From positions 1-64,000 of the IMG/VR virus record IMGVR_UViG_3300042511_000879: a stretch of DNA of 64,000 nt; one strand, 5' to 3'. Positions 2,111-37,408 of this stretch are shown here, piece after piece. Both the position numbers and the translations under genes were made by a program. The notes under the pieces were generated by a model. That model ran no database searches. It was not told the DNA's origin and saw only the letters and a list, made by a program, of their open reading frames with translations. The first letter of the stretch is position 1; every line of letters starts with the position of its first letter.

Positions 2111-2611
2111 ATGGCTTTTAATAACAAATACCCAAAGATTCGTCGTACTGGAGGACCCTATCCAAGGAATAGGTATGGTGTATGTTATGAAGGACTCTCG
2201 CGACAACAGCGTCGATTACTATTAGAGAATCCATTAATGAAAGAAAGGGCTCAATCTGACCAGTTTCTACATATTATCTTTGAGATGTGTAAATATAAAA
2301 ATGATTCGAAGAGGGACAAATATTATTATGATTGGTCTACTGGGGAGCTTATGAAAAGTGAAGAGCTTTCGGATAGTTACGATACAATTGATTGGACTTG
2401 CGCTCTATCTGGAGAACCTATCAGGTCTAATATAAATAACTTTAATGCGGAGAACTTTGTTCATCCTGATTATCACGATACTCTTGGCGGTAAAATGGTG
2501 GATGGTAGAATCCTAAAATCTTCTGTTGCCTTCCAACAGCACGTAAAAAAACTCCTATTGAATCAACAAAAGGAGTTTTTAAATATTGCTAGAAAAAATT
2601 CGAAATTATAG
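2111..2611 (+). CDS. Hypothetical protein (the only convincing plus-strand gene)
   Basis: 166-aa ORF filling the gap between two minus-strand genes, preceded by GATAAATA. Confidence 0.7.
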   Translation: MAFNNKYPKIRRTGGPYPRNRYGVCYEGLSRQQRRLLLENPLMKERAQSDQFLHIIFEMCKYKNDSKRDKYYYDWSTGELMKSEELSDSYDTIDWTCALSGEPIRSNINNFNAENFVHPDYHDTLGGKMVDGRILKSSVAFQQHVKKLLLNQQKEFLNIARKNSKL

Positions 2612-3715: not shown

Positions 3716-3752
3716 ATTTTAATTTATTTTGTTATGATAGATTATATATCAC

Positions 3753-3783
3753 AAAAAAGGGAACTGATTTCTCAGTTCCCTTT
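3753..3783 (-). terminator. Intrinsic terminator after the major capsid gene
   Basis: GGGAACTGA/TCAGTTCCC stem flanked by A/T tracts. Confidence 0.8.
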
Positions 3784-3818
3784 AAGTATAATTAGAATGT
3801 TAGTTCTAATTTAAAATA

Positions 3819-12066: not shown

Positions 12067-14241
12067 TTATCCTGTTACGGTCCATCCTTTAGCAGTTGCT
12101 ATAGACCTTGTGCAACCTGCTGCTCCAGTGCAACCTGTTATATTTATTGTTTTTGATGTTACTGTAGTTAAATCTGTAAATAATTGGTCTAATGCTGCTA
12201 TTCCTAAATCACAGTAAGATACGTTTATTTGCGGAGAACTTCCTACCCATTGTCCTATTGATGTATTTAATAATCTTAGACTATTAAGCTTATTAAAACG
12301 TGAATTAAATGAGCCATTTACAGCTAATTGAGAGAATGGACAATTAAAACTTAGTGATGTTAGTGCATATGTTTGGGATGTAAAAAATGATCCATTAACT
12401 AAAGGAGTAGCTACTAAACTTCCTATTTTGTCTAAATTATTTACTGTTGTTAATACTCCGCATTGAGTTAACATGTTTGAAATAGTATTTATTGCAATCA
12501 TTTGCGTTGTTGGAAGTGTTATAGTTTTTAAATTAGTACATCCAAGAAATGTTTGTTGAAAACTGGAAATTGCTCCTGCTGTTGTAGGTAGCGTGATTGT
12601 TTCTATCTTAATGCAGTTGGTAAATGCTAAGGCTGCACTAGTAAGAGATGTTGTGCTTATAGGTAATGTAAGAGATGTTAAATTGAAACAGTTTAGAAAC
12701 GTATTTGCCATTGTAGTTAAAGAAGGCATTGATGCTGGAAACACTACAGAGGATATTCTTATGCAGTTAGAAAATGTATTTTGCAGTGTATTGACTGAAG
12801 TTAAGCTTGTAGGTAGTGTAATAGATTCTAATTTATAACAGTTGTTAAATGTACCTAACATTGTAGTTATACTATCCTGGGTGTTATTTGGTAAAACAAC
12901 TGTTTTTAAACTAATACAGTTGTTGAAAGCGTTATTTAATGCGCCTAGTGTCCATGCAGATGGAATTGTTATAGATTTTAATGCATAACAACTATTAAAC
13001 GTAGATTGCATGCTAACAGATGCTCCAACAGTAACTGGTAATGTTACTGACGTTAACAAATAACAAGTTTGGAAAGTCTGATCCATCATTGTTAGATTAG
13101 GCATTGGTGATTGAAATATAACGCTTATTAAACTATTACAATTACTAAAAGTATTAACTAGCGTATTGGCGTTGAAGTTTATAGGAAATACTATATTTTT
13201 TAAATTGAAACAACTATTAAAAGCAGAGCTTATATTATAAAAAGCCGTGCTCGAACATTCTGAAGGAAAGTACACATGTTGAAGAGATGAGCACTGAGAA
13301 AACATGCTTGCCGCATTAACAGCAGTCAACCCGGATGAAAACACAGGAAAAGATGTAAATCTAACCCATTGTAATGATTGACATAGTTGAAAAATAGAAC
13401 CTAGATCTATGCATATATTAATACTTGGTAAAGTTACATTTTTTAAAGAAATACAATTCGAAAACGCTGCTTGGAGGGCAGTAACACTATTTAATGTTGT
13501 AGGAAAAGATACAGTTCTTAAAGACCTACAACTAGAAAATGTAGTCTGTAAACTAGCTATTGATGTAGCATTTAATGGTAATGTTATATCTAATAAATTT
13601 ACACATCCATTAAATGTACTTACTAATGTGACTAGAGAACTAGCGGATGTAGGCATAACAACTTTATGCAAATTTACACAGTTTTGAAACATATATTGCA
13701 TTTGAGTAGTCCAAGTAACAACTGCAGGTAATTTTACATATTCTAACTCTGTAAAACTTGCAAAGGAATTAATACCTCCAATAGATGAAAATAAAGATTG
13801 AGATATTTCTTCCATTGTACCATCTCCAAAATAAGCTTCTAATACACCTACACTATAGGATGGATTTCCTCCTGTAACAGAGAAATTAGGAACATGTTTT
13901 ACATTTGTAATTACGCACGTTGCATCTCCATATATTCTAATTTTAAATGTATTATATCCACGCGAGCAAGGAGTACCTCCTGTACTATAAACATGGTTTG
14001 TTGTTTGTACTGTAGGTATAGTTATAGTGTCTATTACACCATCACCCCAATCTATATAGATATTAGCTCCACTATTTTGTGTGAATGTAGTTTCAATAGC
14101 AAATGCTTTTAATCCCGTATCGGCAACTAAAAATTGAACTTCATTTGCTACATCTGTAATTGTTATCCAATCTACAGGTCTTACCCAATCTGCAGGAGTT
14201 GGGTGAGGTGCTATTGAATTTATTGGTATATTAAATGCCAT
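12067..14241 (-). CDS. BspA/TpLRR-type leucine-rich-repeat protein with N-terminal IDWGDG (PKD-like) module, putative adhesin
   Basis: About 15 repeats of F..C..L..(V/I).(L/F)P at ~24-aa spacing; IDWGDG; C-terminal IATAKGWTV. Confidence 0.8.
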   Translation of the reverse strand: MAFNIPINSIAPHPTPADWVRPVDWITITDVANEVQFLVADTGLKAFAIETTFTQNSGANIYIDWGDGVIDTITIPTVQTTNHVYSTGGTPCSRGYNTFKIRIYGDATCVITNVKHVPNFSVTGGNPSYSVGVLEAYFGDGTMEEISQSLFSSIGGINSFASFTELEYVKLPAVVTWTTQMQYMFQNCVNLHKVVMPTSASSLVTLVSTFNGCVNLLDITLPLNATSIASLQTTFSSCRSLRTVSFPTTLNSVTALQAAFSNCISLKNVTLPSINICIDLGSIFQLCQSLQWVRFTSFPVFSSGLTAVNAASMFSQCSSLQHVYFPSECSSTAFYNISSAFNSCFNLKNIVFPINFNANTLVNTFSNCNSLISVIFQSPMPNLTMMDQTFQTCYLLTSVTLPVTVGASVSMQSTFNSCYALKSITIPSAWTLGALNNAFNNCISLKTVVLPNNTQDSITTMLGTFNNCYKLESITLPTSLTSVNTLQNTFSNCIRISSVVFPASMPSLTTMANTFLNCFNLTSLTLPISTTSLTSAALAFTNCIKIETITLPTTAGAISSFQQTFLGCTNLKTITLPTTQMIAINTISNMLTQCGVLTTVNNLDKIGSLVATPLVNGSFFTSQTYALTSLSFNCPFSQLAVNGSFNSRFNKLNSLRLLNTSIGQWVGSSPQINVSYCDLGIAALDQLFTDLTTVTSKTINITGCTGAAGCTRSIATAKGWTVTG

Positions 14242-14245
14242 TGAT

Positions 14246-16063
14246 TTATGTGGTTTGTGTTATTATTATATCTACTACAATATCTGCTTCCGGAGGAAAT
14301 TGAGAGAAAAATATTGCTACAGTATATCCGGTTGATATGTATGGAAGTATTTGTGCGTTATATGCCGTTTGATAACTTTCATTTTGTGGTGTTATTGATA
14401 AATCAGTATTAGGAGTTATATTTGTATTAGAAAATGTATAAGTATAATATAGGCCATTTAATGTCCAAGAGGCAGCATTTAATGTTTGTGAATATAATTT
14501 TATAAATGCAGATGCACCTTGGAAACCTTGAGCACCTTGAGCACCTTGGAAACCTTGAGCACCTTGAAAACCTTGAGCACCTTGAAAACCTTGGACACCT
14601 TGTGCACCTTGGAATCCTTGAAAACCTTGTGCACCTTGGAATCCTTGAAAACCTTGGAAACCTTGAGCACCTTGGAATCCTTGAACTCCTTGCGCACCTT
14701 GGAATCCTTGAGGTCCAAGATCACCAATATCTCCTGTTCTTTGAAACGTAATGTAGACTAATTGGTCAGGTGGCGCACTTCCAGCAACAGGGCTAGAAAG
14801 AAATGCAACTGGTACATCATAATGGTCATTATGTTCTGTATGATTACCAGTAATGCTAAAAAACGCGTAAAGAAGTGGATCGGCCTGTGATGTTATTTTA
14901 AACGTACCTTTGATCTGAGAAGATGAATCATCAATTGTTTGTAAAAATGATTGAATGTTTTCAGAGTTAGAATCTGAATATGAAATGTACATCATTGTAC
15001 CAAATTCATTAATCCTTACATGTCCTGCAGTCAAATTTGTAGGATCAACTGTAATATCATCATAATAGAACTCAAATGTTGCACCACCAAAAGTTCCTGG
15101 TTCACCTTTTTCTCCTTGAGCACCTTGGTATCCTTGAAGTCCTTGGTAACCTTGAGTTCCTTGGTAACCTTGGTAACCTTGGTAACCCTGAGCTCCTTGG
15201 TAACCCTGAGCTCCAAATAAAGAAATTCCAGGAGGTTGGGTTGGCGTAGGTACCTGTATAATATCTCCAATAAATTTTCCAGAGATTTGATTAACATCTT
15301 CGGCGTTTACTATATTATTAATCGTAAACATTCTGTTTCCAGCAAATTGTTCAGTAGAAAGCTTGTTGGAGCCAAACCCTTGTTCATTACCTAAATAGAA
15401 AGAAGGTATGAATGAATTGACTTCAATTGGAAATGTTATTTTAAATTGATCTTTGTCTTCGTATGTAAATCCAACTGGTCTATCTAAAGTATAATCGTCC
15501 GGGAGTGCATAATACGATGCAATTCGATAATTACCCTCTTCTAAATGTCCAACTTCAACATTAAAATAGTTGGATTTGTACATTCTTTTAATTATTGATT
15601 CTGTTATTTTAAACGAATCAAGAGTTGAAGATACTAGGATTTCGACATCAAATCCAATAGTGATTGGAATCATGTCAAATTCAGCAACATAGGATTCTAT
15701 GATACCTTCAGAATTCATTTTGGTATAATTACCCATGATTCTTTTGTTAACTAGTTTTCCAGAATCAATAGAAAGTCCTGTAAAGTTTACAATTCCTCTA
15801 GGTACAACATCGTAATTACCATCGGCGCTTGCTTTATCCGGAGTACAATTCGGTCCAGAAGGTGTTGAGAATAGAAAATTGTCTCTTAAGAACTGGTCAT
15901 CCCCTGTTATTGAGTAGTAAAATGGAACATCCACTACTACTCTTTCTTCGTTAGTTATTTGTCGATGAAAATACAATTTAGTATTCAAATCGGCTAAAAA
16001 TCCTATAATAATGTGTCTAACTACACTATCATCTGAATTAAATTTTTGATTGTAACTTGCCAT
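14246..16063 (-). CDS. Tail terminator/sheath stabilizer (gp15-like) fused to collagen-like fibre domains
   Basis: N-terminal VDVPFYY..VPRG...PITIGFDVEI resembles gp15; two G-X-Q collagen tracts follow. Confidence 0.62.
   Translation of the reverse strand: MASYNQKFNSDDSVVRHIIIGFLADLNTKLYFHRQITNEERVVVDVPFYYSITGDDQFLRDNFLFSTPSGPNCTPDKASADGNYDVVPRGIVNFTGLSIDSGKLVNKRIMGNYTKMNSEGIIESYVAEFDMIPITIGFDVEILVSSTLDSFKITESIIKRMYKSNYFNVEVGHLEEGNYRIASYYALPDDYTLDRPVGFTYEDKDQFKITFPIEVNSFIPSFYLGNEQGFGSNKLSTEQFAGNRMFTINNIVNAEDVNQISGKFIGDIIQVPTPTQPPGISLFGAQGYQGAQGYQGYQGYQGTQGYQGLQGYQGAQGEKGEPGTFGGATFEFYYDDITVDPTNLTAGHVRINEFGTMMYISYSDSNSENIQSFLQTIDDSSSQIKGTFKITSQADPLLYAFFSITGNHTEHNDHYDVPVAFLSSPVAGSAPPDQLVYITFQRTGDIGDLGPQGFQGAQGVQGFQGAQGFQGFQGFQGAQGFQGFQGAQGVQGFQGAQGFQGAQGFQGAQGAQGFQGASAFIKLYSQTLNAASWTLNGLYYTYTFSNTNITPNTDLSITPQNESYQTAYNAQILPYISTGYTVAIFFSQFPPEADIVVDIIITQTT
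14515..14715 (-). repeat. 9-bp-period tandem repeat encoding the collagen-like (GFQ/GAQ/GVQ)n tract
   Basis: ccttgagca/ccttggaaa/ccttgaaaa units. Confidence 0.9.
15095..15213 (-). repeat. Second collagen-like tandem repeat (GYQ/GAQ/GTQ)n
   Basis: ccttggtaa units. Confidence 0.85.
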
Positions 16064-22280: not shown

Positions 22281-23477
22281 TTAAAATAATGATGTTGAAT
22301 AAATTAAGTTTCTATTTAGTGTATGTAAACCAACTGCGGTTAGAACCCGGTTCAATGGATCTATAACACTCTTTTCGAATTGTGTTTCATAGTCAACGGT
22401 TGGCGCAATTTCATAAGGATGAGCTCCAGGTTGGTATGCAAATATTTCGCAAGTTCCATGTTTACAGTGGTATAGTTTTAACTTTTCACCATTACCAATC
22501 ATCTTGTATTTGTTCTTATACTTTGGATTTTGATTCATTAGGAAATTATAAAATCCTGCAGCTTTAACGTTTGGTGGACATTTTAAACCATATTGAAATT
22601 CTACCGTATCGTCTATGATATATTTTTCAATATTATTAGTTCTTTTATTAAAACATATCTCATCAACACTTGCTAATTGAAATTCTTTTTTACATTGTTT
22701 CAAATAATCTACAAGTCTTTTTAATAAGGACGCTGTAGGTTTTTCTGAAAGAATCAGTTTAAGAATCTCAGTCAACTGCTTTCTTGCAAGAGCTGGAGTT
22801 GAACTTTGAATTGTATCAAATCCGATGGTTTTAACTTTCTTAAGCGAAGGGTAACGTTCTTCGATTCCAATTTTATCTTCCCAAGCAATATTTTGCAAGT
22901 ATTTTTTCTTAGCTAACCAAATTCCAGAGTATGCAATCGTTTCTAATTCAAACTGAAGGAAGTTTTCTGTATTAGTTGCTTCCGCATATTTCTCCATACA
23001 CTTAAAGATATATTCTTTAAGTCTGAAGTTATACAATTTCATAATAAATTGGTCAATCGATACCTTGTCTCCGAGCCATTCAATAGATTCATACATCTCT
23101 TCAAATTGTACGTAACAAGAATCGGTATCAATATAAACAACAGAAGGTCTCACCAACTTGTTTTTAACTTGAATATTAAAAAACTCATGAACTACTTTAT
23201 CTTTAGTCCAAAACTCTTGAAAATACTTATTTAGTATCTTCTCAGAATATAGAATCGCAGACTGTCCCTGTAAGGTAATAGATTCTGCGATGTCTATATT
23301 AAAAAAGTGAAACCATTTGTTACCGAAGGCGCCATAGATCGAGTTAAGCATTACTTTTACTGCTTGTTCATAGGCTCCAAACTTTGCTGACAACATAGAA
23401 TAATGCTCAACCAATGTTTTAATTTCATCTTGTGATAAATCACTTTCTGGTTTTAGTATTAATTCTTCGATTGTCAT
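22281..23477 (-). CDS. Family B DNA polymerase, C-terminal subunit (split gp43, part B)
   Basis: Motif B KVMLNSIYG, ITLQGQ, motif C YIDTDS, KKKY, thumb region; lacks exonuclease domain and motif A. Confidence 0.9.
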   Translation of the reverse strand: MTIEELILKPESDLSQDEIKTLVEHYSMLSAKFGAYEQAVKVMLNSIYGAFGNKWFHFFNIDIAESITLQGQSAILYSEKILNKYFQEFWTKDKVVHEFFNIQVKNKLVRPSVVYIDTDSCYVQFEEMYESIEWLGDKVSIDQFIMKLYNFRLKEYIFKCMEKYAEATNTENFLQFELETIAYSGIWLAKKKYLQNIAWEDKIGIEERYPSLKKVKTIGFDTIQSSTPALARKQLTEILKLILSEKPTASLLKRLVDYLKQCKKEFQLASVDEICFNKRTNNIEKYIIDDTVEFQYGLKCPPNVKAAGFYNFLMNQNPKYKNKYKMIGNGEKLKLYHCKHGTCEIFAYQPGAHPYEIAPTVDYETQFEKSVIDPLNRVLTAVGLHTLNRNLIYSTSLF

Positions 23478-28056: not shown

Positions 28057-29454
28057 TTATTGGAGCAGTTTTTTCAACCGGTCAGCTTTTGTGTAATATT
28101 CATAAGAAGTTTTTTTATAATCTTTACGTTGTGCATATAGGTCACTTAATATCTTTCTGAGAATAGAATCTTCGGTCTTATAAACTACGCCATTATCACA
28201 AACGATAACCTCTTTATTTTTTCTGCGCTCTTCAATTTCACTTTTATAAATCTTTTCAATATATGCATCGGGAGATATATTAAATTGTCTCATTATCGAA
28301 GGATATAGTGAAGCAAAATCGAATGCACTTACACCTTCATAGAATCCTAAGATTGGTTCTTTTACAAATGCTCCAGCATATTGGCCATCTTTTTGGCTAT
28401 CAGATTTCTCTTCACTTCCAATTCGCATTCCTTGCTCAGCAAGTTTTCTTGCCATAATTGCTTCAGTAACTGCCACTGGAGAACTTGCTTTGTATAACGG
28501 CATATTTGTAATATTTGCCAGTGTTAGTAGTACCTCCATCGACTTCAACTTCTGGTCAATGTAATATACAAGCACTGAATCGACAACATTGTAATATATG
28601 TACTTGACAAAGTTATCCCGGTATAAGTCCTGTAGTGATCCAGTGAACTTGATTTTGTTAACGTTCAAGACTTGACTTGAAACATAATCTAATGAATTGG
28701 ATTCTTTAACTTTTACAGTTCGGTCATATTTGTCATACAATTGCATATAGTCAAGAATTCCGATATGAAGAGGACGACCATCTGTATGATCGATTGAATG
28801 GGTCATACCAACTTCTTTAATATCGATTTGAAGTCTTTTACATCGATTAACGATATACTGCCAGTCATAGTTGATAAAATTCCACCCAGTCATCATAGGA
28901 AACTTTGGTAAGAATTTCATTAAGAATGTGTAAACCATATCGTACTCAGACTTGAACTTATGGTACTTAAATTCCCAGTCCTGGTCAAAATCTTTGAAGT
29001 ACTCATTAGTATCGTCTTGAATCTTTTGGATTTTATCTGAAGCCATATCTTCCAGTCCAAGCACGATTGCTTTACGGTCTGGAGTAATTATTGAGAATGA
29101 AAGAATTCTACTTTTGGCCTCTTCGGCTTTTGGAAAGCCATCAACAATTTCAGTTTCAATATCGACAAAATAAGTCTTTGGCATATTATATGCTGTTAGG
29201 TCTTTTTTGTCCTTCTCTGAAAGATTATCTAAAAAATAAAGAATTGAAAACTTATTAAATTGTTTTCCATATCCTAATTTAACAGGACGGCCATCCCAGT
29301 TTTTATAGTCTGGACTGGCCGCTCTGTCTTTTTCATCACAAACATACCAATTTTGGAATTTATCCACTGGGTATTGTTTAAATGCTACTTCTCCCTTGTC
29401 ATTATAGTATGAAATGATAACATCTTTTTCACGCTGCTCGATGTCAAGTATCAT
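28057..29454 (-). CDS. Family B DNA polymerase, N-terminal subunit (3'-5' exonuclease + motif A; split gp43, part A)
   Basis: VDIETE, GWNFINYD, YNVVD, YAGAFV, motif A FDFASLYPSI; ends within the fingers at QRKDYKK. Confidence 0.9.
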   Translation of the reverse strand: MILDIEQREKDVIISYYNDKGEVAFKQYPVDKFQNWYVCDEKDRAASPDYKNWDGRPVKLGYGKQFNKFSILYFLDNLSEKDKKDLTAYNMPKTYFVDIETEIVDGFPKAEEAKSRILSFSIITPDRKAIVLGLEDMASDKIQKIQDDTNEYFKDFDQDWEFKYHKFKSEYDMVYTFLMKFLPKFPMMTGWNFINYDWQYIVNRCKRLQIDIKEVGMTHSIDHTDGRPLHIGILDYMQLYDKYDRTVKVKESNSLDYVSSQVLNVNKIKFTGSLQDLYRDNFVKYIYYNVVDSVLVYYIDQKLKSMEVLLTLANITNMPLYKASSPVAVTEAIMARKLAEQGMRIGSEEKSDSQKDGQYAGAFVKEPILGFYEGVSAFDFASLYPSIMRQFNISPDAYIEKIYKSEIEERRKNKEVIVCDNGVVYKTEDSILRKILSDLYAQRKDYKKTSYEYYTKADRLKKLLQ

Positions 29455-29921
29455 TAATAGTTATTTTTCTGACGTTGAACGTTTGCTTCTGCTTTTGCGA
29501 AGTAGTAATTATAGGCTGTTTTGGCATCCAATCCAATCGATGCTGCATAGTTAAATACAAAGTGGATTATGTCGACCCATTCCATATACAATTCTTTTTT
29601 ATCATCTTCCGATAGGTCACTGATTTTCAGGGTTTCATACTTTGAAAAGTCTTTTTTCCAGTATTTCCAAACTGCATTTCCACTACCATCTTTAATACCA
29701 CCAAGAGCATCGGTCATTTCATGAATTTCATCAATAACAGCGTGTGTGTTAACATGCCAAAAGTTCATAATCTCTCTAAGTGTCATATCTTCGAAATTAA
29801 AACCATAGGTTTGCTCTTGCATTTTCTTTTGATTTTCCATGATGTCAGCTAAATGTGTAGTTGATTCATTGTAGAAGTCATTAACTTCCAGGTCTTTACA
29901 TTGATTGTCTATATTTGCCAT
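29454..29921 (-). CDS. Dimeric all-alpha dCTPase/dUTPase (T4 gp56-like)
   Basis: DEIHEM..ALGG, WKYWKK, EWVDIIHF, NVQRQKNNY. Confidence 0.8.
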   Translation of the reverse strand: MANIDNQCKDLEVNDFYNESTTHLADIMENQKKMQEQTYGFNFEDMTLREIMNFWHVNTHAVIDEIHEMTDALGGIKDGSGNAVWKYWKKDFSKYETLKISDLSEDDKKELYMEWVDIIHFVFNYAASIGLDAKTAYNYYFAKAEANVQRQKNNY

Positions 29922-29963: not shown

Positions 29964-31154
29964 TTAAAATAAACATGAACTTTTAAATGATGGAGCTTCA
30001 ATCTCACAAGATTCACCAATTTGTTCTTTTGAAATTGGAGCATTTGCACGGTTTAAGGCCATCTTTTTACTATCTCTCAATCGTAAAAATACACCAAACT
30101 GACAACAACTAATTTCAGTACCAAATGTAGTAAACCTTCCAGTCTCTGTGATTGTTTGTAAGTAGTCAAAATTCTCTCCTGTAAAATCAAAGAATTCATG
30201 TTGAGTGTCCCGGATTTGTCTGATGACTTTAGCTCCAACGTCAGATGAAATTGAAAAACCTAAGTCTTCATAGAACCAGTTGATTGTAATCATCGCACCA
30301 ACTCCGGGTGCAACAAAATCATCATCTTCGTTAAGATTTCCAGATAAACTATTTGGTCGCAATAGATCAGGAGTACCGATTTCAGGCATTCTGGCAAGGT
30401 TGGTACTAAAATGGTAACCATAATAGTTTCCAATTCCTCGATGAGAAGTTAAAAATTCAAAAGACTCTTCCATCGTCGGTTTCTTAGCATAGAATTCTGC
30501 AAAACGTGGACCTAGTAGAGTAAACCAAAAAAACATATCGCTTGTTCGACTCTGTCTGATTGGATCTGGTTCGGCATTTATTAATACATCATAAGGAGTT
30601 TTAAGTACTCGGGCATAGTTTCTTGATTCAGTCTGAAGACTTGTTCGTAATTCAGTAGTGCCATAAATCTTTTCTCCACGTCTTTTTGCATTTTCCATGT
30701 TAACCATACACTGTAGAACATACTTCTCATCATTAACTAATCGGTCATATTTGACAAATGGAAATCCAGTGTCGTGCGTTAATAGACTAATTGTATTTGA
30801 CGGTCCATAGAATTTTACAATCGCTGCATTAATAAGACGGTCTTCAAATGTACAGTCTGGATTGTAGAACACATTTTCATTTAACCAAATAATCTCATCG
30901 TGAAAAGAACGATTTGGATGGAAGTATGGAACTGAACGTCCATCTACTATAAATCCATGTCCAAACGTGTTTTCTTTTCCAGTTCCTTCACGGTGCCGAA
31001 AGGTATCAAAAGTACATGTTTTTGCAAAACGAACCTCATATTCTCTTCGATTCATTTCATGAACAAAATCTCGAATAAGTTGTCTTTTTTCTACAGGAAT
31101 TAAATCCAATAGGGCTTGAGAATCCATCTCAAGCAGTTTTTTGTTTGAAGTCAT
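29964..31154 (-). CDS. Putative amino acid:DNA transferase / aGPT-pyrophosphorylase-like DNA hypermodification enzyme
   Basis: HhH-like LTSHRGIGNYYGYH, FVAPGVGA and TEISCCQF match the aGPT-Pplase pattern (GIG.F..Y, FVV.GPGA, EH.LCEF). Confidence 0.65.
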   Translation of the reverse strand: MTSNKKLLEMDSQALLDLIPVEKRQLIRDFVHEMNRREYEVRFAKTCTFDTFRHREGTGKENTFGHGFIVDGRSVPYFHPNRSFHDEIIWLNENVFYNPDCTFEDRLINAAIVKFYGPSNTISLLTHDTGFPFVKYDRLVNDEKYVLQCMVNMENAKRRGEKIYGTTELRTSLQTESRNYARVLKTPYDVLINAEPDPIRQSRTSDMFFWFTLLGPRFAEFYAKKPTMEESFEFLTSHRGIGNYYGYHFSTNLARMPEIGTPDLLRPNSLSGNLNEDDDFVAPGVGAMITINWFYEDLGFSISSDVGAKVIRQIRDTQHEFFDFTGENFDYLQTITETGRFTTFGTEISCCQFGVFLRLRDSKKMALNRANAPISKEQIGESCEIEAPSFKSSCLF

Positions 31155-31161
31155 TTTAAGT

Positions 31162-31863
31162 TTATTTTTTAAAGAAGCAATCGTGCGCTATTAAATTATC
31201 GGTAAATATAATCAATGGAACTATTCTAGAATGTGAATAAATTGACTGTAGCCTTTCCATTACTTGGTACATTTCAGCTCTGTGTTTTCCAGCGTGTAAT
31301 TCAATAAATAAATATTTAGGTTGATAATCTATTAAGGTATCGATTAGCGTATATTCAGCAGATTCAATATCCATTTTAATTATATCCGGATTGTATTTCT
31401 TTAGTAATTTTTTTAGATGGATATTTTCAACTGAATCATATTCATTAAACTTTACCTTGTTCTCAATTGAAGTTGAGCAATGCGCATTTTGACTTGACGA
31501 TTTGAATATCTTTAGTGTTTTATCAGGAAGTCCAGAAACTGCAGCATATATTAAATCCACATAATCATCATTTTTAAATGTTGATTGTAATTTTTCAAAG
31601 TTTCGGGCATCACATTCTACAGTACAAACTTTGCTTGCTCCGGAATCTATTGCAATTTGAGTAAAAGCACCAATATTGGCTCCAAGGTCTAAACAAACTG
31701 TTCCATTATAATCAATTTCAGGAACTAAGTAATTAGAAATGCTTTCACCAATCATAGTATCGTCAACACCTTCTGATGCACCTAGTATTTTAACATACTT
31801 CTTTTTAAGTCGAGTCCTTTCTAATTTTGAAATTGGAAACTCTGGAAGTTTAACCCTACTCAT
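31162..31863 (-). CDS. FkbM-family SAM-dependent methyltransferase
   Basis: CLDLGANIGAF, VECD..N, IKMDIESAE, IELH. Confidence 0.85.
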   Translation of the reverse strand: MSRVKLPEFPISKLERTRLKKKYVKILGASEGVDDTMIGESISNYLVPEIDYNGTVCLDLGANIGAFTQIAIDSGASKVCTVECDARNFEKLQSTFKNDDYVDLIYAAVSGLPDKTLKIFKSSSQNAHCSTSIENKVKFNEYDSVENIHLKKLLKKYNPDIIKMDIESAEYTLIDTLIDYQPKYLFIELHAGKHRAEMYQVMERLQSIYSHSRIVPLIIFTDNLIAHDCFFKK

Positions 31864-31864
31864 C

Positions 31865-32263
31865 TTATTTTTGTACTAATTTTGATACAATATTAACCAA
31901 TTCTACATCAGGACAATTTTCCTGAAGGATTTGATATTGTATTGGGTCATCTTCAAAAAAACGTGAAACAATAACACCTTCACCCTTTAAACGGTTAATA
32001 GTATGGGCTTTGTGATGCCCAGAATGTCTTCTTGCCGCAACTGTATGATTTCCACGTTCCTCTAGAGTCATTGGATTAAAATACACTTTGCATTTAATTC
32101 CTCTCTCTTTAAGGATTGCGAGAACCTCGTCCTGTTCATCGACACATCTTCCGGTAATAACAAAATCTGTGGTTGCTCTTGGAGTTATTCCAATTGAGAT
32201 TACTCCATCAAAATCGTATCCGTAGATATCGACTGATTTTTTAGTTTTAAATATATTTAACAT
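31865..32263 (-). CDS. Capless HAD-family phosphatase
   Basis: Motif I YDFDGV, motif II ITGR, motif III K (HHK), motif IV FEDD. Confidence 0.8.
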   Translation of the reverse strand: MLNIFKTKKSVDIYGYDFDGVISIGITPRATTDFVITGRCVDEQDEVLAILKERGIKCKVYFNPMTLEERGNHTVAARRHSGHHKAHTINRLKGEGVIVSRFFEDDPIQYQILQENCPDVELVNIVSKLVQK

Positions 32264-32278: not shown

Positions 32279-32308
32279 AAAAAAAGGGAGAGTTATTCTC
32301 TCCCTTTT
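32279..32308 (-). terminator. Intrinsic terminator after ino1
   Basis: AAAAGGGAGAG/CTCTCCCTTTT stem. Confidence 0.72.
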
Positions 32309-32323
32309 GGATTAATTGGATTG

Positions 32324-33514
32324 TTAGTTTTTTGTTTTAGCAACTAACTGGTTTCTTGTAGAATCTGTTAGGCGTCTTGCAGCCAATTCAGTACACTCAT
32401 AAACAGCGTCAGAGAACATCATCTGGTCTGGTGGAGTTTTTTGTGTAAACGCTGAAGGACCTCTTAAGGCTCCTACAACTCCTAATTCTCTTGCAACTCT
32501 TAAGTAACGAACTGCGTCGATTACAACTCCTGCAGAGTTTGGAGAGTCTTGTACACTTAATTGAGCATCAAAAAGAACTGGTGCTCCACCGAATCCTGTA
32601 AGTTCTAAACGGAAGTTAGCAACTTTATTATCACCATAGAATGCGATATATTCAGAAGGACCTGCATGTAAGAATGAATCTTCAGTTGAGATTCCTCTAA
32701 TTTCGTTTTGAGCACGAATAACGTTTTCTTTAGAAATCTTTTTAGATGCTAGACGAGATTTGTCTTCCATGTTTAAGAAATCTGTGTTACCTCCAACGTT
32801 TCTTTGGATGTGCGCTTTTACATGATGTCCTCTTTCAAAGGCAAGTTCTTGTAACATTTGAGAAAGAATACTTGCTCCAAATTGAGAACGCATATCATCT
32901 CCGATAATTGGAATACCTGCATCGATAAATCTTTGCTCCCAAGCTGGGTCAGATGCGATAAAAACTGGAATACAGTTTACTAAAGAGATTCCTGTTTCAA
33001 GACAAATTTCAGCCCAGAATTCAGTTGTTTTTTGTGAACCTACTGGTAAGTAGTTAATAAGTACTTCAACACCGTGGTCTTTTAATTTAGCAATAATTGA
33101 ATCTTTCCACTCACGTGATTTTTTTGGAGTCCAATCAGTACGGTTCATGTCTGTAGAATTTCTTAGTTTTTCGTCAACTAAGAAACGATTTTGCTCTGGA
33201 TAGTTGTCCATAAGAGCTGCGTAACCATCAATAACAGGTGATTCATAAACTGGTGCTGTAGAAGTAATAACATCAACGATGTCATACGCACAGTTTGGTC
33301 TTTGTTTAAGGGCATATCCTAATGTTTGATTAACTTTACGTTCATCAATTTCAAAGGCACATTCAAATTCAATATTTTCTGCCTTGTAACCTCCAATATC
33401 GGACTTCATCATTCCGGTAATATCATTTGGATTTTCTGTGTAATATTGTACACCTTCAACTAATGATTTAGCGCAATTTCCGGCTCCAATAATTCCTACT
33501 TTAATTTTCTTCAT
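32324..33514 (-). CDS. ino1: myo-inositol-1(3)-phosphate synthase
   Basis: GIIGAGNCAKSLVEG, NYLPVGS, NCIPVFIAS, GDDMRSQ, NVGGNTDFLNM, SKKISK, GPSEYI, DSPNSAG. Confidence 0.92.
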   Translation of the reverse strand: MKKIKVGIIGAGNCAKSLVEGVQYYTENPNDITGMMKSDIGGYKAENIEFECAFEIDERKVNQTLGYALKQRPNCAYDIVDVITSTAPVYESPVIDGYAALMDNYPEQNRFLVDEKLRNSTDMNRTDWTPKKSREWKDSIIAKLKDHGVEVLINYLPVGSQKTTEFWAEICLETGISLVNCIPVFIASDPAWEQRFIDAGIPIIGDDMRSQFGASILSQMLQELAFERGHHVKAHIQRNVGGNTDFLNMEDKSRLASKKISKENVIRAQNEIRGISTEDSFLHAGPSEYIAFYGDNKVANFRLELTGFGGAPVLFDAQLSVQDSPNSAGVVIDAVRYLRVARELGVVGALRGPSAFTQKTPPDQMMFSDAVYECTELAARRLTDSTRNQLVAKTKN

Positions 33515-33540: not shown

Positions 33541-33568
33541 TTATACTTGTTTTATTTAAAAAGTTTCA
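33541..33568 (-). promoter_or_regulatory. TGAAAC-N17-TATAA promoter (representative copy, upstream of ino1)
   Basis: Identical spacing at 2071, 24262, 37433, 37721, 54921; near matches at 20641 and 10990. Confidence 0.7.
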
Positions 33569-34615
33569 AAAAAGAGTATTGATAGTCTTCTTTAGGACAA
33601 CATTTTTTTCGGACGTCTCGAAATCATATTGGTAAAACTCTCTAGATAGGTGAACAGAACCTGGCTTTTCCATGTAAGTATCGGCAAAATATTGAGGTTC
33701 TGCTGAATACCAGTGAATTGGCCATTCGATTACGTTCATATTATATATAGCCGAGAGTTTGTCAACCTCTTCGTTAAATATCTCCATCAATTGAGTCCGT
33801 TCTCGTTGAGTTCCGATAAATGGAGTATTTTTGTAGTACCCAGTTTTTGGGATTCTACGACCTTCGAATTCGATTGGCAATAATTTTACAATGGTATTCT
33901 TTTGGATTCCTAAAGATTTAAGGTGTTCAAAGTAATTTGTTACTAGACTTTTAACTGCATCAATAGGTTTTTCTTGTCGACATAGGTGATGTCGAACATC
34001 AATGTTTCCAAAGTATGTAATTAGGTGCTCGGTTCCTTCAGGAATATATGAGGCCATTCCTTCTTTCAAGACTCCAAATAGTGTTTTACCATCATTTCGA
34101 CTAATATTTGCACCAGGATGGTACACTGAAACTGAATGAGAATCTCCCAATACAAATGTTTTTGAATCTAATTTTAATTCAATTGTTTGGGTTTCTAAAC
34201 TTCTTTTGGTAAGCTCTGCTGTATTAAGAGATGCCCATAAAGGAGAACATGATTTCATTCGACTTTCGGCAAATTGGCCAACATTTGGCATTTCTCGATT
34301 CAAACAATATATAGTTCCACTAAAATCTAAGAATCTTTTAATTCTCTCTGCTGGTTCATCAGTAGCTCCACCAAATAGATTATAAGAACCTTGGAATTCC
34401 ATTGGAAGCGCTACTAGCCAGATATCATATTGGTGAATATCTTCTGACTTTGTAAGTACTTCAACTTCTAATCCTAGAGACCTCAATTGATTAGCTAATA
34501 AGAAGGCCCATGCACTTTTATGAGAGGCCTTCTTTGAGCTATAAGTTGTTACAACATCATCAATTGCAATCTTCTTTCCCTTTAATGATTCTAAAACTTC
34601 GTAAATATTAACCAT
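33566..34615 (-). CDS. Two-domain protein: beta-glucosyltransferase-like N-terminus plus SGNH-like C-terminus
   Basis: KIAI...LGLEVEVL..DIHQYDIWLV..NLFGG resembles the T4 BGT N-domain; LGDSHS, GNID, SVHLS are SGNH blocks. Confidence 0.5.
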   Translation of the reverse strand: MVNIYEVLESLKGKKIAIDDVVTTYSSKKASHKSAWAFLLANQLRSLGLEVEVLTKSEDIHQYDIWLVALPMEFQGSYNLFGGATDEPAERIKRFLDFSGTIYCLNREMPNVGQFAESRMKSCSPLWASLNTAELTKRSLETQTIELKLDSKTFVLGDSHSVSVYHPGANISRNDGKTLFGVLKEGMASYIPEGTEHLITYFGNIDVRHHLCRQEKPIDAVKSLVTNYFEHLKSLGIQKNTIVKLLPIEFEGRRIPKTGYYKNTPFIGTQRERTQLMEIFNEEVDKLSAIYNMNVIEWPIHWYSAEPQYFADTYMEKPGSVHLSREFYQYDFETSEKNVVLKKTINTLF

Positions 34616-34901
34616 TGAAAGCGTCATCTATATCGTTTCTATTTTCTTCAATGTAATTGTCTAATCCTTGGATATATGCAACTGCATCTAATAAATTATC
34701 ACGCTTGTGATTGTATGATTCTCTCGAGAATTTAAGTGCAACTAGCGCTTTAAACATGTGTTCACCAGTAACTTCAAGTCCGGTCATACCTTTAAAAATC
34801 ATTGCAGCTCGATCCATACCTTCTGAGAAAGGACCATAATTTCTGTCTGCTTCTTCTGAGCGGTTGTTTACAATTCCGCTTGCTTCATCTAAAATATTCA
34901 T
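34608..34901 (-). CDS. DUF6378-like small helical protein (nucleotide-modification associated)
   Basis: ILDEA..IVN.R...YG..., LVALKFSRE..HKRDNLLDAVAY. Confidence 0.7.
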   Translation of the reverse strand: MNILDEASGIVNNRSEEADRNYGPFSEGMDRAAMIFKGMTGLEVTGEHMFKALVALKFSRESYNHKRDNLLDAVAYIQGLDNYIEENRNDIDDAFNG

Positions 34902-35983: not shown

Positions 35984-37408
35984 TTATACAATTGGAGCGT
36001 ATCTCTCACTCAAAATTGTTTTATCCATTATTTGTTGTGGAGATTCGATATCTCCACCAAGTAAACTTGTCATAATTGCTGGAGAGAATCCAGAAACTAA
36101 TGCAGTTCCTTTAGCATCAAATGCAACTGGTACTCCTCCGTTTCGGGATTGAATATTCCAGTAAACAATTTGAGGTACCCTGTAACCTGCATCGGCATAA
36201 AGGGTTTCAATCATCTTCTGAGCAGTTGGATTCCAGTGGCTTTCTCTACCGTAACCTTTTCCTGTTGCCGAATTAAATTCCATATCCGATAGGATTAAGA
36301 TTTTGTTTGGCATTTTGTCTTGAGACAATTTGTGCTTAGTGGCCTGATCTAGGATCAGTTTGAATGTAGCCTCAAGATCTGTTGACATTCCCCAATCAGA
36401 GTCTGACATCTGTGTGTAGCGATCATTCAGTGAGCCACTTAATACTTGTAACTGTGGTTTACTTGAGAATGTGATAAATGCATCTTTGAAAAGACCTTCA
36501 TTTCTTTCAGAAATATAAAGACCTAAAGAGATTGCAACATTCATACAAGTTACAGTTTTACTTCCACCAGCTGGAGTTGACATAGAACCTGAAACATCTA
36601 CTACTGGTAAAATCATATCGTTTGCACCTTCCAAATAGTTTGGTAAGGCTTTCCATTGTTCGTTTGCTACGGTTGCATTTCCACGTTCTAATGATGTAAT
36701 AACGTCATAAGGATAAACTGCACCTGCATTAATTTTAGCCTCACCTTTTACAAGAGAAGCAATGTACGCTGAATAACTTTCGTATGCATTTTTACCAAAG
36801 GCTTTTTGGTATCTAGCCGAAGCAACTGAAGGTAATTTACCAAAATCAATAGAATTCCAGTCTTTAGCACACATTTTAGTTTCAACTACATTAGTTAAAC
36901 CTACAAGAGATTTTCTGTATTGTTTTGGGGACATTCCAGTAAATTTACGTAACTTTTCAGCTATTGGACCTTTACGTGGCATCCATTTAGCACATAAACC
37001 GTTTTCGTTGATTAATGCATCAGAGATTAGGGTGAATGCATCTTTTTCAAGATATGTTCCTGATAGGGCTAATAAGTCATCCCAACGACCATACTCTGAG
37101 ATTAAGTGTAAGTTTGGTTTAAGTACTAAGTCGTGGTTTTCTGCTAAATAAACTAAAATGTCCTTGAAAACTTGACGTTCTCCAGCTCCACCTCGAACAT
37201 CTCTGGCCCAGAAAAGTAGTTTCATAGCACGCTTCGGATCTTCATTAAATGCTTTAGAGAAAGTTGCAATCAAACGTTGCTTGTCTTGTCCTCTCATAGC
37301 TCCAATGTTAAAGAAAAGGTCAACGCAAGCATTCAATGAACTCGAGTTTGTCGCCATTCCATTTTCAGTTACTATATCTTCTTGTCTTAATGCGTCTAAG
37401 AATTCCAT
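35984..37408 (-). CDS. Ro60/TROVE-like protein with C-terminal vWA domain (DUF2828 family)
   Basis: TENG, RDVRGGAGER, YGRWDDL, AKWMPR, MIDAS VVDVSGSM, ILSDMEFN, IVYWN, VSGFS. Confidence 0.85.
   Translation of the reverse strand: MEFLDALRQEDIVTENGMATNSSSLNACVDLFFNIGAMRGQDKQRLIATFSKAFNEDPKRAMKLLFWARDVRGGAGERQVFKDILVYLAENHDLVLKPNLHLISEYGRWDDLLALSGTYLEKDAFTLISDALINENGLCAKWMPRKGPIAEKLRKFTGMSPKQYRKSLVGLTNVVETKMCAKDWNSIDFGKLPSVASARYQKAFGKNAYESYSAYIASLVKGEAKINAGAVYPYDVITSLERGNATVANEQWKALPNYLEGANDMILPVVDVSGSMSTPAGGSKTVTCMNVAISLGLYISERNEGLFKDAFITFSSKPQLQVLSGSLNDRYTQMSDSDWGMSTDLEATFKLILDQATKHKLSQDKMPNKILILSDMEFNSATGKGYGRESHWNPTAQKMIETLYADAGYRVPQIVYWNIQSRNGGVPVAFDAKGTALVSGFSPAIMTSLLGGDIESPQQIMDKTILSERYAPIV

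What the first reader, a model, noticed from the sequence alone, without database searches (positions are those of the whole stretch)
33566..34615. Hybrid BGT-like / SGNH protein inside the modification cluster
The first ~110 aa (KIAI..., LGLEVEVLT..DIHQYDIWLV...NLFGG...IYCL...P) follow my recollection of the T4 beta-glucosyltransferase N-terminal, DNA-acceptor-side domain. The second half has SGNH-hydrolase blocks (LGDSHS, GNID, SVH) in place of the UDP-sugar domain. It may be a DNA-binding module reused to deliver an acyl-transferase/esterase to a modified base.
Basis: inference. Interest (0 to 1): 0.62.

Follow-up and report, generated by a model that had tools for sequence, protein, structure and literature searches.

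The report
Phage BGT-like/SGNH hybrid DNA-modification enzyme
A T4-like phage gene encodes the DNA-acceptor half of the T4 hydroxymethylcytosine glucosyltransferase joined to an esterase/acyltransferase (SGNH) domain, which makes it a strong, still-unannotated candidate for a new way phages decorate their DNA.

Summary
Window 33566..34627 (minus strand) is a real 349–353-aa gene. It belongs to a large family (over 1,200 proteins) found only in phages, every member labelled "hypothetical".

**Architecture**
- **N-domain:** it is homologous to the acceptor-side N-domain of T4 beta-glucosyltransferase (BGT). Profile–profile probability is 96% (E 5e-9). BGT is the top structural hit among 48,161 chains. 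Both families keep the same invariant N-x-F-G-G loop. BGT's catalytic Asp100 and its UDP-glucose domain are not retained.
- **C-domain:** it has an SGNH fold (Z about 12). Block I Ser, block II Gly, block III Asn and block V His are invariant.

**Genomic context**
- The gene lies between a gp56-type dCTPase plus DNA polymerase and a translationally coupled DUF6378 gene.
- Its cluster also holds an inositol-phosphate synthase, a HAD phosphatase, an FkbM methyltransferase and a helical protein like the 5-hmdU-DNA-kinase helical domain.
- That helical protein is fused to the target in Aeromonas phages 44RR and 31.
- Phages 44RR, 31 and 25 make hydroxymethyl-dCMP but have no glucosyltransferase.
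- All six target-bearing genomes I checked encode a gp42-like enzyme.

**Most likely function:** a post-replicative enzyme directed at 5-hmC DNA that uses Ser/His ester chemistry. The exact reaction is inferred, not shown.

The parts
33566..34627 (-). Target gene: two-domain BGT-N-like / SGNH protein (353 aa from ATG 34627; probable true start ATG 34615, 349 aa)
   Evidence: ORF. More than 1,200 homologs, all unnamed. AF2 model pLDDT 88.8, pTM 0.88. Homologs start at M5.
34172..34627 (-). N-domain (aa 1-152), homologous to the acceptor-side N-domain of T4 beta-glucosyltransferase
   Evidence: VIA top hit 1c3j_A, Z 6.5. Foldseek TMq 0.54 to 1qkj. hhalign 95.9%, E 5e-9 against the BGT family. 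BLASTP E 0.011 against T4 BGT.
34364..34381 (-). N-L-F-G-G-A loop (aa 83-88); N83, F85, G87 and A88 are invariant and G86 is at least 90% conserved. It aligns with the BGT family's N70, F72, G73, G74
33569..34171 (-). C-domain (aa 153-353), SGNH/GDSL fold
   Evidence: VIA Z 10-12 to many SGNH esterases and to the PatB/OatA acyltransferases. Foldseek probability 1.0. 14 of 40 family members hit Pfam Lipase_GDSL, best E 8e-5.
34133..34147 (-). SGNH block I, G-D-S-H-S (aa 161-165); S163 is the predicted nucleophile
   Evidence: Invariant. Aligns to the TesA GDSLS block.
33998..34009 (-). SGNH block III, G-N-I-D (aa 207-210); N208 is the predicted oxyanion-hole residue. It is followed by the invariant residues R212, H213, H214
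   Evidence: Invariant. Aligns to the TesA GGND block.
33650..33658 (-). SGNH block V-like S-V-H (aa 324-326); H326 is the predicted general base. There is no Asp at the -3 position
   Evidence: S324 and H326 are invariant. The assignment to block V rests on position within the fold and is an inference.
34608..34901 (-). DUF6378 gene, translationally coupled to the target; function unknown
   Evidence: Pfam PF19905, E 1.4e-8. Immediately upstream in 73 of 80 related loci. 8-nt overlap with the target's start. Not gp56-like.
32324..33514 (-). myo-inositol-1-phosphate synthase family enzyme
   Evidence: Pfam PF01658, E 1.5e-22. NCBIfam TIGR03450, E 1e-85, but below the curated cut-off. Adjacent to the target in 55 of 80 loci.
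31865..32263 (-). Small HAD / polynucleotide-kinase-phosphatase-like protein (D-x-D-G-V motif)
   Evidence: phrog_415, E 1.6e-4. Motif seen in the translation. Present in 50 of 80 loci.
31162..31863 (-). FkbM-family methyltransferase
   Evidence: Pfam PF05050, E 8.8e-13. Present in 43 of 80 loci.
29964..31154 (-). HMUDK_hel-like helical protein, the Rosetta-stone partner of the target
   Evidence: Pfam PF18723, E 5.4e-8. It matches the second half of phrog_17781, whose first half is the target. Fused to the target in Aeromonas phage 44RR ORF233c, 795 aa.
29454..29921 (-). T4 gp56-type dCTPase/dUTPase homolog
   Evidence: BLASTP against T4 gp56, E 9e-20. Syntenic in 43 of 80 loci.

Best explanation
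The gene encodes a phage enzyme that acts on replicated phage DNA containing 5-hydroxymethylcytosine (5-hmC).

**Proposed mechanism**
- The N-domain descends from the acceptor-binding half of a BGT-type GT-B glucosyltransferase. It keeps the N-x-F-G-G loop that is invariant in BGT, and I infer that it still positions the hydroxymethyl-pyrimidine of DNA.
- The UDP-glucose-binding half has been replaced by an SGNH domain with an intact Ser163 / Gly180 / Asn208 / His326 set. The chemistry at, or next to, the 5-CH2OH group is therefore predicted to be acyl (ester) transfer or ester cleavage through an acyl-serine intermediate, not glycosyl transfer.
- The enzyme works with a second, interchangeable module that is fused to it in some phages. 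In this phage that module is a protein resembling the helical domain of 5-hmdU DNA kinases.
- The neighbouring genes vary between clades and supply the group that ends up on the base. Here they are an inositol-phosphate synthase, a phosphatase and a methyltransferase.

**What is shown and what is inferred**
- Shown: the two-domain architecture, homology to the BGT N-domain, the SGNH fold with invariant catalytic-type residues, the fusions, the synteny, and co-occurrence with gp42-like and gp56-like genes.
- Inferred: that DNA 5-hmC is the substrate, that the reaction is ester chemistry, and what role the partner plays.
For: **Architecture.** AF2 model pLDDT 88.8, pTM 0.88. C-domain Z about 12 to SGNH enzymes, including the polymer O-acyltransferases PatB (Z 10.8) and OatA (Z 10.1). 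For the N-domain alone, T4 BGT is the top hit of 48,161 chains. hhalign gives 95.9%, E 5e-9, with coinciding invariant N/F/G/G residues. In GT-B enzymes the N-domain binds the acceptor, and BGT is the founding member of the fold class (PMC5713226).

**Catalytic residues.** S163, G180, N208 and H326 are invariant across 40 sequences down to 38% identity. Blocks I and III align to the TesA blocks in register.

**Link to DNA and hmC.**
- The gene sits between a gp56-type dCTPase plus DNA polymerase and DUF6378, a synteny conserved across 80 viral loci.
- In one clade a gp42-like gene lies directly adjacent to it.
- All six target-bearing genomes tested encode a gp42-like enzyme with the catalytic Cys and the cytosine-specifying Asp. 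Five of them, including this one, also keep the Asp that separates hydroxymethylases from 5-hydroxy-dCMP synthases. The PTm1 copy does not (signature from PMC13326640).
- The cultured carriers 44RR, 31 and 25 are the T4 relatives reported to have genes 42 and 56 but no glucosyltransferase (PMC2993671).

**Partner.** Rosetta-stone fusions exist with an HMUDK_hel-like module and with a second, unrelated module.
Against: - No activity, substrate or DNA adduct has been measured for any member of the family.
- The structural Z for the N-domain (6.5) is modest, and Foldseek's E-value for BGT is not significant.
- BGT's catalytic Asp100 and Glu22 positions are not conserved, so the acceptor geometry may have changed.
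- The canonical Asp of the SGNH block V D-x-x-H motif is absent. The Ser-His geometry, and whether the active site faces the N-domain loop, could not be inspected.
- No acyl donor or acyl-carrier gene is evident in this window's cluster.
- SGNH enzymes usually act on carbohydrates. This genome also encodes GT2 glycosyltransferases, so the enzyme might act on a sugar already attached to the base, or on a soluble precursor.
- The PTm1 homolog co-occurs with a TS-like gene carrying the 5-hydroxy-dCMP-synthase signature, so hmC may not be the family's universal substrate.
Confidence: 0.5

Rival explanations
1. Late tailoring enzyme. The protein O-acetylates or O-acylates (or de-acylates) a sugar or cyclitol that another enzyme has already attached to the base. 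That would be ordinary carbohydrate-type SGNH chemistry; the BGT-like domain would only hold the modified DNA.
For: SGNH enzymes typically modify carbohydrates (PMC9487903, listed). The structural neighbours include PatB, OatA, sialate esterases and xylan esterases. The target is clustered with sugar or cyclitol supply genes in several clades: inositol-phosphate synthase here, UDP-galactopyranose mutase in phage 25 and L085, a sugar-nucleotide epimerase in L066, and GT2 genes in this genome.
Against: The target and its active-site residues stay constant while the sugar, cyclitol and amino-acid genes around it change from clade to clade. That pattern fits a common step on the common base better than a step specific to one appended group. 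In one clade the only modification-type neighbours are a gp42-like gene and a DUF707 protein.
Confidence: 0.25
2. Soluble-metabolite enzyme. The protein acts on a nucleotide, sugar phosphate or inositol derivative rather than on DNA. It might, for example, de-acylate or trans-esterify a precursor, with the half-GT-B domain binding a sugar phosphate.
For: GT-B N-domains bind many small acceptors. The adjacent genes make inositol phosphate and probably dephosphorylate it. The 44RR fusion sits next to a Na+/solute symporter.
Against: The specific homology is to the DNA-modifying BGT family, with that family's invariant loop retained. The Rosetta-stone partner is a domain otherwise known from DNA-base kinases. 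The placement among replication and hm-dCTP-pathway genes matches that of b-gt and gene 42 in T4.
Confidence: 0.13
3. Non-enzymatic nucleic-acid-binding or anti-defence protein. The SGNH-like domain would be a binding scaffold, as in the Oskar OSK domain, shielding modified DNA or blocking a host nuclease.
For: The OSK domain (5a4a) is among the structural hits at Z 10.6. The domain carries many invariant basic residues: R177, R212, H213, H214, R257, R277.
Against: All four SGNH catalytic-type residues are invariant across the family, which a purely binding scaffold would not be expected to preserve. The tight linkage to metabolic enzymes points to catalysis.
Confidence: 0.05

Closest known systems
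T4 DNA beta-glucosyltransferase (BGT; Pfam PF09198, GT-B fold)
   Same: The N-terminal Rossmann-like acceptor domain is homologous (hhalign 95.9%, E 5e-9; best structural hit). The N-x-F-G-G loop is invariant in both families. Both are about 350 aa with two domains. Both occur in T4-like phages that encode a gp42-like dCMP hydroxymethylase and a gp56-like dCTPase, close to the DNA polymerase gene.
   Different: The UDP-glucose-binding C-domain is absent and an SGNH domain takes its place. The positions of BGT's invariant T99-D100 and near-invariant E22 are not conserved. Glucosyl transfer is therefore not expected.
SGNH/GDSL hydrolases and SGNH polymer O-acyltransferases (TesA, PatB, OatA C-domain, carbohydrate esterases)
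   Same: Same fold (Z 10-12). Block I G-D-S with Ser at the start of a helix, block II Gly, block III Asn and a C-terminal His are all invariant.
   Different: Sequence similarity is below Pfam thresholds. Block III reads G-N-x-D rather than G-x-N-D. Block V lacks the Asp (S-V-H). There is an unusual cluster of invariant Arg and His residues. The domain is fused to a GT-B half-domain. No SGNH enzyme is known to me, or was found in the literature searches, that acts on DNA.
5-hmdU DNA kinase (5-HMUDK) / thymidine hypermodification pathways (Lee et al., PMC8989533)
   Same: A helical domain of the HMUDK_hel type is paired with, or fused to, a catalytic module. The clusters combine a step on the base with variable genes that supply the appended group. 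Free, non-activated nucleophiles are used in those pathways.
   Different: There is no P-loop kinase domain and no aGPT-Pplase in the cluster. The predicted base is 5-hmC, not 5-hmU. The catalytic module here is BGT-N plus SGNH.
Arabinosyl-5-hydroxycytosine systems of RB69/DLP3 (PMC13326640)
   Same: These are also T4 relatives that lack glucosyltransferases and modify cytosine differently, starting from a TS-homolog product. Their clusters likewise contain sugar-supply enzymes and a PNK-phosphatase-like protein.
   Different: Those phages use GT-B arabinosyltransferases and a D169N-type TS homolog. The TS homologs here keep that Asp, except in PTm1. No homolog of the target turned up in RB69-type phages in the tblastn search of the phage collection.

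Membership tests
T4 beta-glucosyltransferase family (PF09198 / GT-B) | N-terminal Rossmann-like acceptor domain homologous to BGT residues ~1-140 | tested here: met
   hhalign of A2 against A3 gives 95.9%, E 5e-9, query 19-112 on BGT 2-100. VIA top hit 1c3j_A: Z 6.5, 106 aa, 21% identity. Foldseek TMq 0.54.
T4 beta-glucosyltransferase family (PF09198 / GT-B) | Invariant N70-x-F72-G73-G74 loop | tested here: met
   BGT invariants N70, G73, G74 and near-invariant F72 align with the query's invariant N83, F85, G87 and near-invariant G86.
T4 beta-glucosyltransferase family (PF09198 / GT-B) | Catalytic T99-D100, invariant in the family; that D100 is the general base is from my own knowledge | tested here: not met
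   These positions align to R111-E112. Position 112 varies across the query family: E, Q, D, P, S, R, K, V.
T4 beta-glucosyltransferase family (PF09198 / GT-B) | C-terminal UDP-glucose-binding Rossmann domain (family invariants R191, R269, E272; R195 at least 90% conserved) | tested here: not met
   The full-length profile aligns to BGT only over residues 19-112. The C-domain is an SGNH fold. Pfam PF09198 was not detected.
SGNH/GDSL hydrolase superfamily | Three-layer alpha/beta/alpha SGNH fold | tested here: met
   VIA Z 10-12, rmsd about 3 Å, 145-180 aligned residues against more than 40 SGNH structures. Foldseek probability 1.0.
SGNH/GDSL hydrolase superfamily | Block I G-D-S with the nucleophilic Ser | tested here: met
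   G161, D162 and S163 are invariant. They align to the TesA G-D-S block and lie at a strand-to-helix junction in the model.
SGNH/GDSL hydrolase superfamily | Block II Gly and block III Asn (oxyanion hole) | tested here: met
   G180 and N208 are invariant. The block containing N208 aligns to TesA G-G-N-D. Motif spacing is G-N-x-D instead of G-x-N-D.
SGNH/GDSL hydrolase superfamily | Block V D-x-x-H (catalytic His with Asp) | tested here: inconclusive
   H326 is invariant near the C-terminus, but the -3 residue is Gly. Invariant E320 or D210 could act as the acid. The geometry cannot be checked because coordinates are not returned.
SGNH/GDSL hydrolase superfamily | Pfam Lipase_GDSL score above the curated cut-off | tested here: not met
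   13.7-15 bits against a cut-off of 23.6 for the window protein. 14 of 40 relatives give sub-threshold or weak hits, best E 8e-5.
5-hmdU DNA kinase (5-HMUDK) | P-loop kinase catalytic domain | tested here: not met
   No P-loop kinase Pfam hit in the target or in its helical partner. Only the HMUDK_hel domain is present, and it is in the partner.
SGNH polymer O-acyltransferases (PatB/OatA type) | Transfer to a hydroxyl acceptor rather than hydrolysis | not testable with these tools
   The fold similarity to PatB 7tjb (Z 10.8) and OatA 6vjp (Z 10.1) is no higher than to esterases. Distinguishing the two needs a biochemical assay.

The most novel reading that the evidence does not exclude
The protein is the first SGNH-type enzyme that works directly on a DNA base. 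It O-acylates the 5-hydroxymethyl group of hmC in DNA, turning it into a leaving group. In function it would replace the 5-hmdU DNA kinase and use the same kind of helical partner domain. A non-activated nucleophile made by the neighbouring genes could then be joined to the base as an ether: here myo-inositol or a methyl-inositol, in other clades amino-acid- or sugar-derived groups. The product would be a previously unknown cyclitol-type DNA hypermodification, widespread in aquatic T4-like phages.
Probability: 0.18. Interest if true: 0.9.

Novelty: new variant of a known kind. Interest (0 to 1): 0.7.

Why it matters
Phage DNA hypermodifications defeat restriction enzymes and CRISPR, and they have supplied enzymes now used in epigenetic sequencing; T4 BGT is one of those. 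This family would be a new branch of the BGT lineage, keeping the acceptor half and swapping the catalytic half for ester chemistry.

The family is abundant: more than 1,200 clusters in environmental phages. It is also present in cultured phages that are easy to work with. Aeromonas phages 44RR, 31 and 25 are known to make hm-dCMP but lack any glucosyltransferase, and whether their hmC is further modified has been an open question since at least 2010 (PMC2993671). This gene gives that question a specific candidate to test.

Tried and rejected
**Searches that found nothing useful**
- Sequence searches of the whole protein and of each domain profile against PDB sequences gave only chance-level hits.
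- Megablast of the cluster against cultured phages found no match.
- A Pfam PF09198 search of the phage's own genome found nothing, but its control set also stayed silent, so the result is uninformative. The BGT family profile did recover T4 b-gt and found nothing in 44RR.
- Literature searches for SGNH together with hypermodification, for inositol synthase together with phage DNA modification, and for DUF6378 turned up nothing on this family.

**Tests that gave no verdict**
- Complex prediction on the target plus its HMUDK_hel-like neighbour returned "no answer" (score 0.00). This counts neither for nor against binding.
- The TesA-family profile for mapping SGNH blocks was too shallow (hits at least 78% identical). 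Only short local alignments of blocks I and III came out, at low probability.

**Ideas rejected**
- DUF6378 as a gp56-like dCTPase: hhalign shows no similarity. The real gp56 homolog is the 155-aa ORF at 29454-29921.
- Homology between the two fusion partners (HMUDK_hel-like and the '405 family'), and homology of the phage 25 358-aa neighbour to either: hhalign found nothing.
- My recollection that 44RR lacks gene 42 was wrong. It has a strong homolog (PMC2993671).

**Not used:** the large representative-protein search, the look-up of sequencing runs and read laying. No alternative genetic code was needed.
Full report

The window is AT-rich (about 33% GC) and almost every gene lies on the minus strand. 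An ORF of 353 aa runs from 34627 down to 33566 on the minus strand. That ATG overlaps the stop codon of the upstream gene by 8 nt, which suggests translational coupling.

A word search found 1,256 relatives within the length window it can see. None carries a name or a precomputed Pfam domain. PHROGs places the protein in phrog_13881 and in the first half of phrog_17781, both of unknown function.
- N83, F85, G87, A88 (G86 is at least 90% conserved)
- G161, D162, S163, H164
- G180
- N208, D210
- S324, H326

**2. The C-terminal half is an SGNH fold.**

An AlphaFold2 model built on the alignment is confident (pLDDT 88.8, pTM 0.88).
- An exhaustive structural comparison against 48,161 PDB representatives aligns residues 154-342 to more than forty SGNH/GDSL enzymes at Z 10-12, rmsd about 3 Å and 145-180 aligned residues. 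The hits include esterases, TesA-like thioesterases and the polymer O-acyltransferases PatB and OatA.
- Foldseek agrees, with probability 1.0.
- Sequence similarity is weak. Lipase_GDSL is below threshold for the window protein, but 14 of 40 relatives hit it, best E 8e-5.
- Short hhalign alignments place G-D-S-H-S on the G-D-S-L-S block of E. coli TesA and F-G-N-I-D on TesA's G-G-N-D.

The Ser, Gly and Asn positions of the SGNH signature are therefore present and invariant. The His is present and invariant too, but the usual Asp three residues before it is missing. I could not check the geometry, because the tools do not return coordinates.

**3. The N-terminal half is homologous to the BGT acceptor domain.**

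I folded residues 1-152 alone (pLDDT 91.5) and ran several independent tests.
- **Unbiased structure search.** The top hit of 48,161 chains is T4 beta-glucosyltransferase 1c3j_A (Z 6.5, rmsd 3.2 Å, 106 residues, 21% identity, model 18-152 on chain 1-138). T4 alpha-glucosyltransferase ranks tenth. The other hits are generic flavodoxin-like, receiver, TIR or transcarbamoylase domains at Z 5.8 or below. A Z of 6.5 is not decisive taken alone.
- **Foldseek.** No hit is significant, but T4 BGT (1qkj) has the highest TM-score in the list (0.54 over 150 columns).
- **Sequence.** BLASTP of the window protein against T4 BGT gives E 0.011 over 122 residues. The family N-domain profile against the single BGT sequence gives 73% probability. 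Against a profile of 26 BGT homologs it gives 95.9% probability and E 5e-9 over 85 columns, query 19-112 on BGT 2-100.
- **Shared invariant residues.** In the same register, the BGT family's N70, F72, G73, G74 fall on the query family's N83, F85, G86, G87.
- **Negative control.** The full-length query profile aligns to BGT only over this N-terminal stretch. The C-domain has no similarity to BGT.

BGT's invariant T99-D100 aligns to non-conserved positions. Its near-invariant E22 aligns to a conserved Trp. So the glucosyl-transfer machinery is gone while the loop shared with BGT is kept.

In GT-B enzymes the N-domain binds the acceptor and the C-domain binds the nucleotide-sugar, and BGT was the first GT-B structure (PMC5713226). 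The specific role of the N70-G74 loop in BGT is something I could not verify in the held literature.

**4. Genomic context.**

The window belongs to a 234-kb viral record of a T4-like phage. It has gp41-like helicase, UvsX, gp46/47-like proteins, ribonucleotide reductase and a split family-B polymerase. Read in the direction of transcription, the genes around the target are:

| Gene | Evidence |
|---|---|
| DUF6378 | Pfam PF19905 |
| Target | this report |
| myo-inositol-1-phosphate-synthase family enzyme | Pfam E 1.5e-22; NCBIfam E 1e-85 but below cut-off |
| Small HAD / PNK-phosphatase-like protein | |
| FkbM methyltransferase | |
| Protein matching the helical domain of 5-hmdU DNA kinases (HMUDK_hel) | E 5e-8 |
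| Homolog of T4 gp56 dCTPase | E 9e-20 |
| DNA polymerase | |

A weak terminator-like hairpin lies between the synthase and the phosphatase genes. Promoter-like matches do not exceed chance.

**5. Comparative evidence.**

I fetched 80 related viral loci and annotated their ORFs with the window's proteins.
- DUF6378 is immediately upstream of the target in 73 of 80 loci.
- In the clade at 60% identity or more, the whole order from DUF6378 to polymerase and RNR is conserved.
- In a clade at about 50% identity, the gene directly downstream is a thymidylate-synthase homolog (Pfam E 3e-22). T4 has the same b-gt / gene 42 adjacency.
- In a clade at about 40% identity, the inositol genes are replaced. 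A 405-aa protein of unknown family and a PLP threonine-dehydratase-like enzyme are always there. CitG-like, LOG-like, GT2, UDP-galactopyranose-mutase or sugar-nucleotide epimerase genes appear in some loci.

The island thus has a constant core and a variable periphery, as known hypermodification clusters do (PMC8989533).

The target takes part in two different Rosetta-stone fusions.
- With the HMUDK_hel-like module, in Aeromonas phages of the 44RR/31 type: ORF233c, 795 aa; hhalign 100% between its C-half and the window neighbour's family.
- With the 405-aa family, in a complete 225-kb metagenomic phage (L070, 786 aa).

hhalign detects no similarity between the two partners.

In phage 44RR the fusion sits next to a Na+/solute symporter. 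In phage 25 the standalone homolog sits next to a UDP-galactopyranose mutase and an unidentified 358-aa protein.

**6. Which base?**

The phage's own genome has a normal ThyA and a second, divergent TS homolog. Aligned with T4 gp42, the divergent copy has four diagnostic features:
- the catalytic Cys context;
- an acidic residue three positions before that Cys;
- Asp at the position of gp42 Asp179, the cytosine-specifying change;
- Asp retained at the position of E. coli ThyA Asp169.

According to PMC13326640, Asn at that last position marks the newly discovered 5-hydroxy-dCMP synthases of RB69-type phages. The window phage therefore fits the 5-hydroxymethyl-dCMP synthase signature.

The same holds for 44RR (E 1e-83 to gp42) and for three metagenomic genomes that carry the target. 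The very divergent Tenacibaculum phage PTm1 copy has Asn there, plus an in-frame stop. All six target-bearing genomes examined thus encode a gp42-like enzyme.

Petrov et al. (PMC2993671) reported that 44RR, 31 and 25 have genes 42 and 56 but no glucosyltransferase, and that it was unknown whether such phages modify hm-dCMP further. The BGT family profile finds T4 b-gt but nothing in 44RR. In the cultured-phage collection the target family occurs in 43 records: 38 Aeromonas phages (the 44RR/31 and 25 types among them), 2 Stenotrophomonas and 3 Tenacibaculum.

**7. How it most likely works.**

*Shown:* the hybrid architecture, the retained BGT loop, the intact SGNH-type residues, the fusions, and the linkage to hm-dCTP-pathway and replication genes.

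*Inferred:*
- The N-domain still presents a hydroxymethyl-pyrimidine of DNA to the active site.
- The SGNH domain performs acyl transfer or ester cleavage through Ser163 and His326 at, or next to, the 5-CH2OH group.
- The helical partner contributes base or DNA recognition, or a second catalytic step.
- The variable neighbours supply the group that is finally attached.

One argument favours chemistry on the base itself. The inositol-phosphate synthase plus a phosphatase, or a solute symporter in 44RR, would deliver a non-activated polyol. In the known thymidine pathways such free nucleophiles are coupled only after the base's hydroxymethyl group has been activated by 5-HMUDK. Here the kinase's helical domain is paired with the target instead of with a P-loop kinase. 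This is the basis of the 'novel case'. I rate it at about 0.18, because no acyl donor is evident and nothing has been measured.

*Rivals:* late tailoring of an attached sugar or cyclitol (0.25), a soluble-metabolite enzyme (0.13), or a non-catalytic binder (0.05).

**8. Comparison with what is known, and novelty.**

The protein is not a functional member of the BGT glycosyltransferase family, because two defining features were tested and not met. It is a homolog of BGT's acceptor domain. It is a divergent member of the SGNH superfamily by fold and catalytic blocks, although it scores below Pfam thresholds.

Structure searches of viral models and the ESM Atlas find the complete two-domain architecture only in Uroviricota, and every such protein is labelled hypothetical. 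I found no paper connecting SGNH enzymes with DNA base modification.

I therefore class it as a new variant of a known kind: phage post-replicative hm-pyrimidine DNA-modifying enzymes of the BGT lineage.

**9. Caveats.**
- The genome record is about 77% complete.
- The genome has two GT2 genes, one of them 3.5 kb from the gp42-like gene. The target need not be the only DNA-decorating enzyme.
- Complex prediction gave no verdict.
- No reads tool, alternative genetic code or large representative search was used.

Noticed in passing
window 34608-34901 (-): A DUF6378 gene overlaps the target's start by 8 nt and lies immediately upstream in 73 of 80 related loci. Its function is unknown. It is not related to the gp56 dCTPase. 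The family is widespread in phages generally.
   Followed up: partly
window 22281-23477 (-) and 28057-29454 (-): The family-B DNA polymerase is split into two ORFs about 4.6 kb apart: the exonuclease/N part and the palm/C part. The ribonucleotide reductase genes and three small ORFs lie between them.
   Followed up: no
window 35984-37408 (-): A TROVE/Ro-like protein (DUF2828 plus DUF7788; phrog_850 'RNA-binding protein') lies just upstream of the cluster.
   Followed up: no
window 32288-32304 (-): A terminator-like hairpin followed by a T-run lies in the 60-nt gap between the inositol-phosphate synthase and the HAD-like gene. It may split the cluster into two transcription units or act as an attenuator.
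   Followed up: no
L092 (Tenacibaculum phage PTm1, NC_049340 123231-123866): PTm1's divergent TS homolog has Asn at the ThyA-D169 position, the signature of 5-hydroxy-dCMP synthases in PMC13326640. It also carries an in-frame TAA. PTm1 has the most divergent target homolog (gp050), so the family may not be restricted to hmC phages.
   Followed up: partly
L101 (Aeromonas phage 25, NC_008208) 1671-4942; L085 15220-17464: In phage 25 a UDP-galactopyranose mutase and a 358-aa unknown protein lie directly upstream of the standalone target homolog. Metagenomic locus L085 has GT2 plus UDP-galactopyranose mutase in the same island. This hints at a galactofuranose-containing DNA modification.
   Followed up: partly
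L001 (Aeromonas phage 44RR2.8t) 4303-5826: A phage-encoded Na+/solute symporter (SSF, E 6e-53) lies immediately upstream of the target-HMUDK_hel fusion ORF233c. It occupies the place that inositol-synthesis genes hold in the window's clade.
   Followed up: partly
own genome G000:C1:8379-8765 and 81273-81533 (outside the window): Two GT2-family glycosyltransferase homologs. The first is a 616-aa ORF about 3.5 kb from the gp42-like gene, which itself sits among ClpP, ClpX-like and DUF6445 genes.
   Followed up: partly
L070 2379-4736; L074 11020-12231: A 405-aa protein family with no Pfam or PHROG match is the alternative partner of the target. It is fused to the target in L070 (786 aa) and adjacent to it in about 20 loci, always together with a PLP threonine-dehydratase-like gene.
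   Followed up: partly
window 12067-16063 (-): A BspA-type leucine-rich-repeat protein (724 aa) and a collagen-repeat protein with a gp15-like tail-sheath-stabiliser domain (605 aa).
   Followed up: no
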